A DNA stretch of 64,000 bases, from positions 201,219 through 265,218 of the forward strand of contig NIVC01000858.1 in NCBI GenBank assembly GCA_002269645.1, read 5' to 3'. Both the position numbers and the translations under genes were made by a program. Of this stretch, positions 38,024-39,819 are shown piece by piece (position 1 is the first letter of the stretch; each line of letters opens with the position of its first letter). The notes beneath the pieces are model-generated. The model saw nothing but the letters and a program-made list of their open reading frames with translations, was not told the origin of the DNA and did no database searches. The stretch is from Macrostomum lignano (lineage: Eukaryota).

Positions 38024-38793
38024 TTAGCTAACGGAGTTCGTGTGCGTTTTGAGTTGCTGCGGCTGCGCTTGTCTTGTGGCCGCCTGTCCGGCCTGTCTTT
38101 ATGGCCTTCGGCTTCTCGGTGGCTTAGCTGCTGGTTTAGCTTCGCCCGCAGGAGTTTAGCTGCTCCGGCAGCTCGCTATTGGCTGGGCCAGGCCAGCTTG
38201 CCTGCAGGCCTTGGGCTCAGGTCGTTTAGCTGCAGTGCCCACCCTTGCGGCCCTCCATTCACTGGCGACCACCTCAAGTTCGCTTGTTTGCCGCTGTCAA
38301 TGAGAGCCTAATTGCTAGGGTGGGCGGCTGGGTCTGCCCGGCTCGAGTTTCTAGAGTTTTCCGCGCGAGCAGTTACTCGAAAATCTGCGAGATGAAATTG
38401 CCCTGGTGACCGTGCTTTTGTAGTTCTCAGAATTTGGATAACCCCTGTTGCATTTTTTCTCTTTGTGGCTGCTTTGTTGACAGCCAAACCGCTGGATGTT
38501 TCTTACGCATTGCCGACTGTTTGCGTTATTTCTCACGCATGCTGACTGGCTTTTGTTTAATAGCTTATGAAAGTGGCGCTGCATCAGTGAAGCTCGTCTA
38601 TTTCCTCTGCAATCTATATCGATTTCATCGTACCTTTGGTTTGGGTATTTGGTTTAGGGTACTCCTTTGGTATTCCAATACGCCTTCCAATTGATTTCTA
38701 GATTAAAATTTGAATTTTTTTTCCATAATGTTGCTGCATTTTTTACTTTAATATAGCTGATAATTCAAGACTGCCATTTTACTTCATTTGCAG

Positions 38794-39819
38794 CAGCAGC
38801 AGCGGCCCGCCGCCGAGGCGGAAGCGGCCCTGGAGGAGCGGTTCGTCCACCGGGTGTACAGCTGCATGGCGCCCGCCCTCGCCTGCGCGGATGAAGGCGG
38901 CTCCGGCGGCTGCGCCAACCGGCGCGGCCCCCCAGCCTGCGTGCGCGACCTGCTGCGGGACCTGCCGCCCGGCTGCCTGCTGGCCGACCTCGGCTGCGGC
39001 CACTCCGCCGCCGCGCTGTCCCGCCTGGCTGCGGCGCGCGGCCACCTGGCGGTCGGCGCCGACATCTGCCTAGACCTGCTGCTGGCCGCCAACGACGACT
39101 GGCACCGGCGCCGGTCACGGGGCCGCCAGCGACGTCAGCCTCTGCTTGTCCAGGCCGACGTCCTCCGCTGCCCCCTGCGCTCCGCCGCTTTCGACGCCGT
39201 CACCTGCGTGTCGGTGGTGCACCACCTCGCCTCCCGAGACCGACGCCGCCGCCTCCTGGCCGAGGCTGCCCGCCTCCTTAGGCCCGGTGGCCGCCTCCTC
39301 GTCACCGCCTGGGCCTTCGAGCAGCCGGGCCGGCCGGCGAGGAGCTTCAACTGCCAGGACCTCCTCGTGCCGTGGGGCGCGCCGGAGCCTCCGCAGACTC
39401 CGGCTTTGCCGCCGCCGCCGAAGCCTCCGCCGCGGCCGGCGTGGCAGCGCCGCCTGAGCTCCCTGCCGCTGCTGGCCGGCTTCTTTGGCGGCAGCCGCAA
39501 CGGCGGCGGCTCCGGCGACTGTCAAGCCGACAGCAGCGACTGCGAGAGCGACTCGAGCGACTGCGAGTTCCGCATCCGGGAGTTCCCCGCTTCGTCGTGC
39601 CCGCGCCGCCACACGGCCGGCGACTGCTTGTGCGACGGCGCCTGCGGAGCGGCGGGCGCGCCGGCCAGCGAGGGCCGCAGGCTGCGCTACTACCATGTGT
39701 TCAGGCAGGGTGAGCTGGCCGACTGCGCCCGCGGCCTCGGCCTGGACTGCCTGCGCGAGTGGCACGAGCAGGGCAACTGGTGCCTGTCGGCCAGGCGGAT
39801 GCCCCCTTCATACTACTGA
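38794..39819 (+). CDS. TRMT9B: Trm9-family tRNA methyltransferase (TRMT9B-like); the ORF lacks its own ATG before the conserved N-terminus
   Basis: Motifs are LEERFVHRVY, LADLGCG (SAM-binding), FDAVTCVSVVHHL, RLLRPGGRLLVTAWAFEQ, QDLLVPW, RYYHVFRQGEL and EQGNWC. An acceptor TTCATTTGCAG ends at 38793 in phase 0. Confidence 0.88.
   Translation, partial: QQQRPAAEAEAALEERFVHRVYSCMAPALACADEGGSGGCANRRGPPACVRDLLRDLPPGCLLADLGCGHSAAALSRLAAARGHLAVGADICLDLLLAANDDWHRRRSRGRQRRQPLLVQADVLRCPLRSAAFDAVTCVSVVHHLASRDRRRRLLAEAARLLRPGGRLLVTAWAFEQPGRPARSFNCQDLLVPWGAPEPPQTPALPPPPKPPPRPAWQRRLSSLPLLAGFFGGSRNGGGSGDCQADSSDCESDSSDCEFRIREFPASSCPRRHTAGDCLCDGACGAAGAPASEGRRLRYYHVFRQGELADCARGLGLDCLREWHEQGNWCLSARRMPPSYY

What the first reader, a model, noticed from the sequence alone, without database searches (positions are those of the whole stretch)
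38750..38870. TRMT9B has no usable ATG: start codon possibly donated by the spliced leader
The first in-frame ATG (38866) lies after the conserved LExxxVHxVY helix. The ORF instead opens at a branch-like CTGAT, pyrimidine tract and CAG (ends 38793) in phase 0. Upstream I found only weak ATG-plus-donor options (ATG AAA|GTGGCG at 38567; AGG|GTACTC at 38659). Flatworm spliced leaders end in AUG, and use of that AUG as initiator is established in Schistosoma. Leader plus exon would give MQQQRPAAEAEAALEERFVHRVY. In-phase acceptors also precede Twinkle (40371), CCT8 (30607) and the AJM1 5' exon (61342).
Basis: partly seen in the sequence, partly recalled or inferred. Interest (0 to 1): 0.72.

Follow-up and report, generated by a model that had tools for sequence, protein, structure and literature searches.

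The report
Flatworm gene borrows leader's start codon
A Macrostomum lignano tRNA-methyltransferase-like gene (TRMT9B type) has no start codon of its own ahead of an essential N-terminal helix and almost certainly takes its ATG from the trans-spliced leader, a mechanism already known in flatworms, so this is a sound but ordinary case.

Summary
The window is Macrostomum lignano (Mlig_3_7 contig NIVC01000858.1). The TRMT9B-like ORF opens after a TAA at 38761-63. Its first in-frame genomic ATG is at 38866. The family's N-terminal helix LEERFVHRVY (38830-38859) lies upstream of that ATG.

A TTGCAG acceptor ends at 38793. It matches the published M. lignano trans-splice motif [T/C]TNCAG and is in phase 0. 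GC content jumps from 0.17-0.37 to about 0.8 exactly there.

The M. lignano leader ends ...TTGCATG. The GenBank CDS on two copies is a 5'-partial protein starting QQQRP, the first base after that acceptor. The annotation pipeline sets 5' ends at mapped leader-read sites.

Homologues start M + 3-9 residues + LExxHVHxVY. N-terminal truncation of Trm9 strongly reduces its activity. Upstream ATG-plus-donor options are weak or broken in paralogous copies. The neighbouring Twinkle-like gene (acceptor 40370) is a second, clearer case.

I found no leader-junction RNA, so trans-splicing at this site and use of the leader AUG are inferred. Leader-AUG initiation was shown in Schistosoma in 2006 and has been noted for Macrostomum. 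This is a new member of a known kind, useful mainly for fixing 'partial' annotations. Confidence is about 0.78.

The parts
37724..37993 (-). Dynein light chain LC8 (DYNLL) gene. It is the divergent upstream neighbour and its ATG is at 37993.
   Evidence: 89-aa ORF. It is one residue different from the paralogous GenBank gene call with Pfam Dynein_light.
37994..38793 (+). 800-bp divergent intergenic region. It is the presumed promoter plus outron of the TRMT9B-like gene.
   Evidence: Among three paralogous copies, the 498 aligned columns upstream of the acceptor carry 22 substitutions and 5 indel events (1, 4, 2, 4 and 2-4 nt in the alignment), against 2 synonymous changes and no indel in the first 150 exon bases.
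38539..38586 (+). Best-scoring upstream ATG-plus-donor candidate (MLTGFCLIAYESGAAS tca|GTGAAG). Rejected.
   Evidence: A 4-nt indel in paralogues L001 and L002 removes this ATG-plus-phase-0-donor combination from both copies.
38567..38572 (+). It is conserved in all three copies but has a weak donor.
   Evidence: The donor is GTGGCG or GTAGCG, against the species consensus GT[G/A]AG (PMC8629364).
38757..38761 (+). Branch-point-like CTGAT, 33 nt upstream of the acceptor AG.
   Evidence: Read directly from the sequence.
38761..38763 (+). In-frame TAA that closes the reading frame upstream.
38788..38793 (+). Trans-splice acceptor TTGCAG. It matches the M. lignano motif [T/C]TNCAG.
   Evidence: with the motif from PMC8629364. 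It is the only motif match between 37994 and 38900 that has a pyrimidine-rich upstream tract and a long downstream ORF.
38791..38802 (+). Four tandem CAGs, which are alternative acceptors that all keep phase 0. Products would be M-QQQRP, M-QQRP, M-QRP or M-RP.
   Evidence: In paralogue L002 the first CAG is CTG, so the next CAG must serve there.
38794..39822 (+). Single coding exon of the TRMT9B-like methyltransferase: 341 codons plus the TGA stop. Codon 1 (CAG) joins the leader's AUG.
   Evidence: The GenBank CDS starts at 38794.
38830..38859 (+). Conserved N-terminal helix LEERFVHRVY of the Trm9/TRMT9B family.
   Evidence: It is the only profile hit in the window. Homologue N-termini are shown. 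The helix lies over SAM in the authors' SAM-bound model, and truncation strongly reduces activity (PMC4678810).
38866..38868 (+). First genomic in-frame ATG, downstream of the conserved helix.
39823..40370 (+). 548-bp spacer to the next same-strand gene. It includes a 61-bp tandem repeat at 40198-40335 and ends in the acceptor CCGCAG (40365-40370).
   Evidence: The spacer is under the published 1-kb operon threshold (PMC8629364).
40371..41673 (+). Twinkle-like helicase gene: exon 1 at 40371-41168, intron at 41169-41511, exon 2 at 41512-41670, then TGA. This is a second ORF with no genomic start codon.
   Evidence: GenBank PAA93876.1 'partial' starts SAAAAK, which corresponds to 40371. The first in-frame Met is residue 111, after the Walker A motif at residue 74.

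Best explanation
The gene is transcribed from the 800-bp region it shares divergently with the DYNLL gene. The AT-rich 5' part of the pre-mRNA (the outron) is removed by spliced-leader trans-splicing at TTGCAG|CAG (38793/38794). The 35-nt M. lignano leader, which ends ...UUGCAUG, is joined so that its terminal AUG is in frame with codon CAG. Translation starts at that leader AUG and gives M-QQQRPAAEAEAA-LEERFVHRVY..., a full-length TRMT9B/Trm9-type methyltransferase of 342 residues. The four tandem CAGs may be used alternately without a change of frame. The Twinkle-like gene 548 bp downstream is processed the same way, and the two probably form a two-gene operon. Shown here: the sequence anatomy, the family motif upstream of the first ATG, the phase, the match to the species motif, the position of the GenBank model's 5' end, and the weakness of the alternatives. 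Inferred: that trans-splicing happens at this site, and that the ribosome starts at the leader AUG.
For: The organism is M. lignano. Its leader is CGGTCTCTTACTGCGAAGACTCAATTTATTGCATG, followed by a GTAAG donor, and the trans-acceptor motif is [T/C]TNCAG (PMC8629364). The acceptor, phase and open frame were checked. GC content is 0.17-0.37 in the 90 nt before the acceptor and 0.73-0.83 after it. The GenBank CDS on the window's contig and on L001 (PAA93875.1, 'partial') starts QQQRP. The transcript model therefore cannot contain the stop at 38761, and its 5' end must lie at 38792-38794. The annotation pipeline trims the leader and cuts 5' ends at peaks of leader-containing reads (PMC5730564). 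Seventeen TRMT9B-type homologues begin M + 3-9 residues + LExxHVHxVY. The motif profile hits the window only at 38830-38859. Removing residues 1-18 or 1-37 of Yarrowia Trm9 strongly reduces activity (PMC4678810). All reported flatworm leaders end in ATG. Cheng et al. 2006 found it in frame with 28% of trans-spliced S. mansoni transcripts and required by more than 40 cDNAs. Wiberg et al. call the Macrostomum leader ATG a likely start codon. Twinkle next door shows the same anatomy and has no Met before its Walker A motif. The only change among paralogues between 38794 and 38865 is synonymous (GAA to GAG at 38821).
Against: No read, cDNA or peptide with the leader-exon junction was available. 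An exact look-up of M+QQQRP..., M+QQRP..., M+QRP... and M+RP... proteins found none in the collection. A scan of metagenome contigs for the junction found nothing. The GenBank model on the third copy (L002) starts 15 nt further downstream at a non-AG position, which is unexplained. 5'-partial CDSs are common in this annotation and not all follow an AG (the 137-aa gene). The leader AUG has a T at -3, a weak context by vertebrate rules, so some leaky scanning to 38866 is possible. The three paralogues are about 97% identical, so comparative power is low.
Confidence: 0.78

Rival explanations
1. Translation of the trans-spliced or unspliced mRNA starts mainly at the genomic ATG at 38866. This would give a 317-residue protein without the N-terminal helix, and 38794-38865 would be 5' UTR.
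For: 38866 is the first genomic in-frame ATG. The leader AUG has a weak -3 context, read from the leader sequence, so leaky scanning is conceivable. The motif after the helix (APHF...WP) is already degenerate in this protein.
Against: A 5' UTR would not be expected to encode the family's LExxxVHxVY motif in frame, yet the only profile hit in 64 kb is there. Truncating this region in Trm9 strongly reduces activity. A leader AUG in frame and upstream would be met first by scanning ribosomes. The exact MAPAL... protein is not in the collection either.
Confidence: 0.08
2. A cis-spliced upstream exon that carries an ATG joins the CAG acceptor, so the start codon is genomic.
For: Several ATG-plus-phase-0-GT combinations exist between 37900 and 38660. 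The best donor is tca|GTGAAG after the ATG at 38539. MK|GTGGCG at 38567 is present in all three copies.
Against: No candidate donor matches the full species consensus GT[G/A]AG; none scores above 2 of 3. The 38539 candidate is lost through a 4-nt indel in both paralogues. The evidence-based GenBank models contain no such exon. The one database model that adds upstream exons (UniProt A0A1I8I2Z5) is a fusion read through antisense DYNLL sequence and still has no initiator Met. In this assembly its last upstream exon is closed by a TAG at 38352, and the scan found no ATG for it (read).
Confidence: 0.05
3. Initiation is at a near-cognate codon in the exon, for example CUG at 38830 in a good GCC-CUG-G context, independently of the leader.
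For: In-frame CTG at 38830 and GTG at 38854 exist.
Against: This is unnecessary if an in-frame AUG sits at the 5' end of the mature mRNA. GTG at 38854 would cut the helix. There is no precedent in this system that I could find.
Confidence: 0.03
4. The locus is a decaying or untranslated copy, so the missing ATG simply reflects loss of function.
For: The protein is divergent and very rich in GC, Ala and Arg. The best non-self homologue is only 40% identical. The M. lignano genome carries many duplicated genes.
Against: All three copies keep the 1029-nt frame intact. Changed codons relative to the window copy are 9 synonymous and 5 non-synonymous in L001, and 2 and 0 in L002. The SAM-binding and C-terminal family motifs are kept. 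Evidence-based transcript models exist on all three copies.
Confidence: 0.04

Closest known systems
Schistosoma mansoni mRNAs that use the spliced leader's 3'-terminal AUG as initiator (Cheng, Cohen, Ndegwa and Davis 2006, J Biol Chem 281:733; cited in PMC9851317, PMC5832876 and PMC12582326)
   Same: It is a flatworm leader ending in AUG, joined in frame to an ORF that has no suitable AUG of its own. From memory, the schistosome leader ends in the same ...TTGCATG.
   Different: The species is a free-living macrostomid and the gene is different. Here the use of the AUG is inferred from sequence and annotation, not shown by cDNA and translation assays.
slORFs: ORFs created by leader-supplied start codons in nematodes, Oikopleura and trypanosomes (slORFfinder, PMC9851317)
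   Same: The concept is the same: trans-splicing supplies the start codon.
   Different: Those cases were called from ribosome footprints and can involve non-AUG NUG codons in the leader. This case is a conserved enzyme's main ORF with a canonical AUG.
GenBank PAA93875.1 (BOX15_Mlig029959g1, partial) and PAA93876.1 (BOX15_Mlig031550g1, partial)
   Same: These are paralogous copies of the same two genes (locus L001). The TRMT9B-like one, like the window's own model P0001, begins at the same first codon after the acceptor. The Twinkle-like one begins at the position corresponding to window 40371.
   Different: The records call the proteins 5'-incomplete. The reading here is that they are complete once the leader's Met is added.
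Yeast Trm9, human and Drosophila TRMT9B
   Same: It is a stand-alone class I SAM methyltransferase with the N-terminal LExxxVHxVY helix and the C-terminal RYYHVFxxGEL...NWC motif. It has a long insert between them, as in TRMT9B.
   Different: The APHFSxxRxxxWP segment is replaced by a Cys/Gly-rich stretch. The sequence is very GC-rich. Activity and a Trm112 partner were not tested.

Membership tests
Leader-AUG-initiated ORF (flatworm type, Cheng et al. 2006) | The organism's spliced leader ends in AUG immediately before its donor site. | tested here: met
   The organism was identified as M. lignano. The published leader ends ...TTGCATG and is followed by GTAAG (PMC8629364).
Leader-AUG-initiated ORF (flatworm type, Cheng et al. 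2006) | The mRNA is trans-spliced at the acceptor in question, shown by leader-junction reads or cDNA. | tested here: inconclusive
   The motif matches, GC content steps up at the site, and the 5' end of the GenBank model falls on the AG. No junction sequence could be retrieved. No gene-level table was found in supplements.
Leader-AUG-initiated ORF (flatworm type, Cheng et al. 2006) | The acceptor is in phase with the ORF, with no stop between the junction and the conserved coding sequence. | tested here: met
   The exon starts at 38794 in phase 0 and is open to 39819. All four tandem CAG acceptors keep the phase.
Leader-AUG-initiated ORF (flatworm type, Cheng et al. 2006) | No genomic AUG can give the full conserved protein. 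| tested here: met
   The first ATG (38866) lies after the conserved helix. Upstream ATG exons are weak or not conserved.
Leader-AUG-initiated ORF (flatworm type, Cheng et al. 2006) | The protein starts with the leader-encoded Met, shown by a translation assay, ribosome profiling or N-terminal peptide. | not testable with these tools
   No such data are within reach.
Trm9 / TRMT9B methyltransferases | [quoted passage not shown] | tested here: met
   Pfam Methyltransf_11 at 5.7e-16. The motif reads DLGCGHS. The best solved relative is Yarrowia Trm9, 5cm2_Z.
Trm9 / TRMT9B methyltransferases | The family's N-terminal helix LExxxVHxVY and the C-terminal RYYHxFxxGEL...NW motif. | tested here: met
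   for the helix. One search, second matched stretch, for RLRYYHVFRQGEL...GNWCL.
Trm9 / TRMT9B methyltransferases | TRMT9B-type architecture: a stand-alone enzyme without the RRM and AlkB domains of ALKBH8, with an insert splitting the domain. | tested here: met
   Only methyltransferase families hit. The protein is 341 aa with an insert of about 95 residues between VPW and RYYH. In most of the top-ranked homologues the match starts within the first 25 residues of the protein, whereas ALKBH8-like hits, matched at positions 270-560, appear further down the list. No phylogeny was made.
Trm9 / TRMT9B methyltransferases | Methyltransferase activity and a Trm112 partner. | not tested
   These need biochemistry.
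M. lignano operon (criterion of Ustyantsev and Berezikov 2021) | Adjacent same-strand trans-spliced genes less than 1 kb apart after subtracting repeats. | tested here: inconclusive
   The TRMT9B stop and the Twinkle acceptor are 548 bp apart, including a 138-bp repeat. The distance criterion is met, but the trans-splicing of both genes is inferred.

The most novel reading that the evidence does not exclude
Obligate dependence on the leader's AUG may be common in M. lignano rather than an oddity of this gene. Both genes of this putative operon (TRMT9B-like and Twinkle-like) lack any usable genomic start. A sizeable share of the 5'-partial proteins in the Mlig_3_7 annotation would then be complete once the leader Met is added. 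For those genes trans-splicing would be a required licensing step for translation. Tandem in-phase CAG acceptors could also give N-terminal length variants.
Probability: 0.45. Interest if true: 0.45.

Novelty: new member of a known kind. Interest (0 to 1): 0.27.

Why it matters
The value is practical. It explains why GenBank lists this protein and its Twinkle-like neighbour as 'partial'. It also explains why an ab initio model (UniProt A0A1I8I2Z5) fused three unrelated stretches in search of a start. It gives the likely true N-termini (MQQQRP... and MSAAAAK...). If the pattern is general, adding the leader ATG to trans-spliced transcript models would complete many M. lignano proteins. M. lignano is also transgenic-tractable, which would let leader-AUG initiation be tested in vivo. 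It does not change what is known about flatworm trans-splicing.

Tried and rejected
1. I looked for transcript-derived proteins by exact look-up: M+QQQRP... in two allelic forms, M+QQRP..., M+QRP..., M+RP..., and the 38866-start form MAPAL.... None is in the 15-billion-protein collection. This gives no evidence either way.

2. I scanned metagenome contigs for the junction TTATTGCATG|CAGCAGCAGCGGCCCGCC and found 0 hits, as expected for an animal transcript.

3. I searched supplements of PMC5816591 and PMC5730564 for Mlig029959 and Mlig031550 and found nothing. Wasik et al. 2015 could not be fetched under the PMC id I recalled from memory.

4. The word-indexed homologue search was swamped by low-complexity words and gave only 3 hits. 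The exhaustive representative search was used instead.

5. No spliced-leader RNA gene is in the window.

6. I considered and rejected the upstream-exon model implied by UniProt A0A1I8I2Z5. Its donor CTG|GTGACC (38405/38406) is decent. In this assembly, however, the exon's frame is closed by a TAG at 38352 and holds no ATG (read), and the model itself lacks a Met.

7. I did not run a structure prediction. Only a single-sequence or very shallow alignment job was permitted, and the role of the helix is already documented for Trm9.

8. No orthologue from another Macrostomum species was found in the databases. Comparison was therefore limited to three copies about 97% identical.

Full report
**What the window is.** The 341-residue protein encoded at 38794-39819 is identical to a GenBank protein of Macrostomum lignano, assembly GCA_002269645.1 (Mlig_3_7). 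The window is the last 64 kb of contig NIVC01000858.1. Two paralogous copies of the locus were fetched: L001 on NIVC01000020.1 and L002 on NIVC01003020.1.

**The observation.**
- In the frame of the methyltransferase there is a TAA at 38761-63. The frame is then open to the TGA at 39820-22. The first in-frame ATG is at 38866.
- The protein has a Methyltransf_11 domain (5.7e-16). Its best solved relative is Yarrowia Trm9, 5cm2_Z. That match includes a second stretch over the C-terminal RYYHVFRQGEL...NWCL motif.
- An exhaustive search of 1.84 billion representatives gave 900 relatives at E<=1e-10. In most of the best-scoring hits the match begins within the first 25 residues of a protein that carries a long insert, as in TRMT9B. 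The seventeen with N-terminal matches that I retrieved begin M + 3-9 residues + LExxHVHxVY.
- In the window that motif, LEERFVHRVY, is encoded at 38830-38859, upstream of the first ATG. A profile of the 10-residue motif built from those seventeen proteins hits the six-frame translation of the whole window once, exactly there (i-E 0.013).
- Immediately upstream lie CTGAT (38757-61), a 75% pyrimidine tract, and TTGCAG ending at 38793. The exon begins in phase 0.

**Why 38866 is not a good start.** For Yarrowia Trm9, removing residues 1-18 or 1-37 left SAM affinity unchanged but strongly reduced tRNA methylation. In the authors' SAM-bound model the N-terminal region forms helices that lie over SAM, with the Tyr of the ...VY motif and the Phe of APHF on top of the cofactor (PMC4678810). 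A protein starting at 38866 would lack that helix and its Tyr.

**Why the leader is the likely source of the AUG.**
- M. lignano has one 35-nt spliced leader, CGGTCTCTTACTGCGAAGACTCAATTTATTGCATG, followed in its gene by a GTAAG donor. About 30% of genes receive it. The top motif at trans-splice acceptors is [T/C]TNCAG (PMC8629364).
- The site here, TTGCAG, fits that motif. Between 37994 and 38900 it is the only match that has a pyrimidine-rich tract and a long ORF behind it. GC content is 0.17-0.37 in the 90 nt before it and 0.73-0.83 after it.
- The Mlig_3_7 gene models were built by trimming the leader from reads, mapping the remainder, cutting transcript 5' ends at the resulting peaks (TBONE), and calling ORFs with TransDecoder (PMC5730564).
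- On the window's contig and on L001, GenBank's CDS is 5'-partial and starts QQQRP (PAA93875.1 on L001). A transcript model reaching back past the TAA at 38761 would have been given an ATG start. A model starting between 38764 and 38791 would have added residues. The model's 5' end therefore lies within 2 nt of the AG.
- Joining the leader gives ...TTGCATG|CAGCAGCAG, that is MQQQRPAAEAEAALEERFVHRVY.... The motif then begins at residue 14, against residues 4-10 in the homologues.

**Alternatives.**
- I scanned every ATG from 37900 to 38790 for a stop-free path to a GT at a codon boundary. No donor matches the full species consensus GT[G/A]AG.
- The best candidate (ATG at 38539 ... tca|GTGAAG) is lost in both paralogues through a 4-nt indel.
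- The one database model with upstream exons, UniProt A0A1I8I2Z5 (975 aa), reads through the antisense strand of the DYNLL gene, fuses TRMT9B to Twinkle, and still has no initiator Met.
- The real upstream neighbour is DYNLL on the opposite strand (37724-37993). The gene therefore heads its own transcription unit and has an 800-bp divergent upstream region.
- Across the three copies, the 498 aligned columns upstream of the acceptor carry 22 substitutions and 5 indel events. The first 150 exon bases carry 2 substitutions, both synonymous, one of them at 38821 upstream of the ATG. The whole CDS stays open in all copies. This fits the coding region beginning at the acceptor, although three copies about 97% identical give little power.

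**A second case next door.**
- The Twinkle-like helicase is intact in the window: exon 1 at 40371-41168, a GT..AG intron, exon 2 at 41512-41670, then TGA.
- GenBank PAA93876.1 is again 'partial' and starts SAAAAK, the first codon after CCGCAG at 40370. The frame is open upstream to 40239 without an ATG.
- The first in-frame Met is residue 111, after the Walker A motif at residue 74. The first 42 residues have five Lys/Arg and one acidic residue, which resembles a mitochondrial presequence.
- The spacer from the TRMT9B stop is 548 bp, under the published 1-kb operon threshold. The pair is probably an operon whose two ORFs both need the leader's AUG.
Those genes have their own ATGs 4 and 12 codons further on, and I could not verify that the sites are used.

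**What is missing.**
- I found no RNA or protein that shows the junction.
- The GenBank model on L002 starts 15 nt further down at a non-AG position, which I cannot explain. In that copy the first CAG is CTG, so the next CAG would have to serve; it is still in phase.
- 5'-partial CDSs are frequent in this annotation (3 of 5 genes around the site), and one of them does not follow an AG.
- The leader AUG has a T at -3, so some leaky scanning to 38866 cannot be excluded.

**Comparison with what is known.** All reported flatworm leaders end in ATG (PMC12582326). Cheng et al. 2006 showed that the schistosome leader's AUG serves as initiator. It was in frame with 28% of trans-spliced transcripts and required by more than 40 cDNAs (PMC9851317; PMC5832876). 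For Macrostomum, Wiberg et al. [quoted passage not shown] This gene meets the sequence-level criteria of that class. The two criteria that need RNA or protein data remain open.

**Verdict.** It is a new member of a known kind. Interest is low to moderate (0.27). The main value is in correcting annotation and offering a testable example in a transgenic flatworm.

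Noticed in passing
window 1-7346: There is a 31-bp unit (CATGAACTGGGATGGGGCATACTGTGCATGT) repeated 237 times at 100% identity, with strong GC skew. Such perfect copies over 7.3 kb suggest either a very young satellite or an assembly artefact.
   Followed up: no
window 15788-19622, 32363-34149, 41228-41484, 44717-46409, 58085-58786 and others: Minisatellite arrays (periods 20-64 bp, tens of copies) fill many AT-rich introns and spacers. They include introns of CCT8 and Twinkle. 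This fits the published remark that repeats inflate intergenic distances in M. lignano operons.
   Followed up: no
window 40371-41673: The Twinkle-like gene encodes only the DnaB-type helicase domain (319 aa), with no primase-like N-terminal domain. It has a presequence-like N-terminus and no genomic start codon before Walker A.
   Followed up: partly
L002 9985-10001 (equivalent to window 38791-38809): In this paralogue the first CAG of the acceptor run is CTG. The GenBank CDS there starts 15 nt further downstream (AAEAEA...) at a position not preceded by AG. The reason is unexplained.
   Followed up: partly
UniProt A0A1I8I2Z5 (P0007), covering window about 37778-42000: This is a 975-aa ab initio model that fuses an ORF antisense to DYNLL with TRMT9B, Twinkle and further sequence. 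It has no initiator Met. It is probably a side effect of gene finders failing on ORFs whose ATG is in the leader.
   Followed up: partly
window 37160-37175, minus strand: The bHLH (NPAS4-like) gene has AAGCAG two bases before its ATG. If that were a trans-splice site, the leader AUG would read AUG-AGA-UGA, a two-codon upstream ORF overlapping the real start. This is purely a sequence observation.
   Followed up: no
window 37994-38017, minus strand: DYNLL has CAACAG 21 nt (7 codons, no stop) upstream of its ATG. This is again in phase with a leader AUG if it is used.
   Followed up: no
window 47155-48022, minus strand: The GenBank 137-aa CDS is 5'-partial and starts SGQPGQ. It is not preceded by an AG, so not every 'partial' model in this annotation marks a trans-splice site.
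   Followed up: no
window 40385-41702: The gene call on the window's own contig for the Twinkle locus is 324 aa, has no Pfam hit on record, and has a start coordinate 14 nt after the acceptor. The L001 copy is called as 319 aa with DnaB_C. Yet the window encodes the 319-aa protein with a single mismatch. This is probably a frame or model difference in the annotation.
   Followed up: partly
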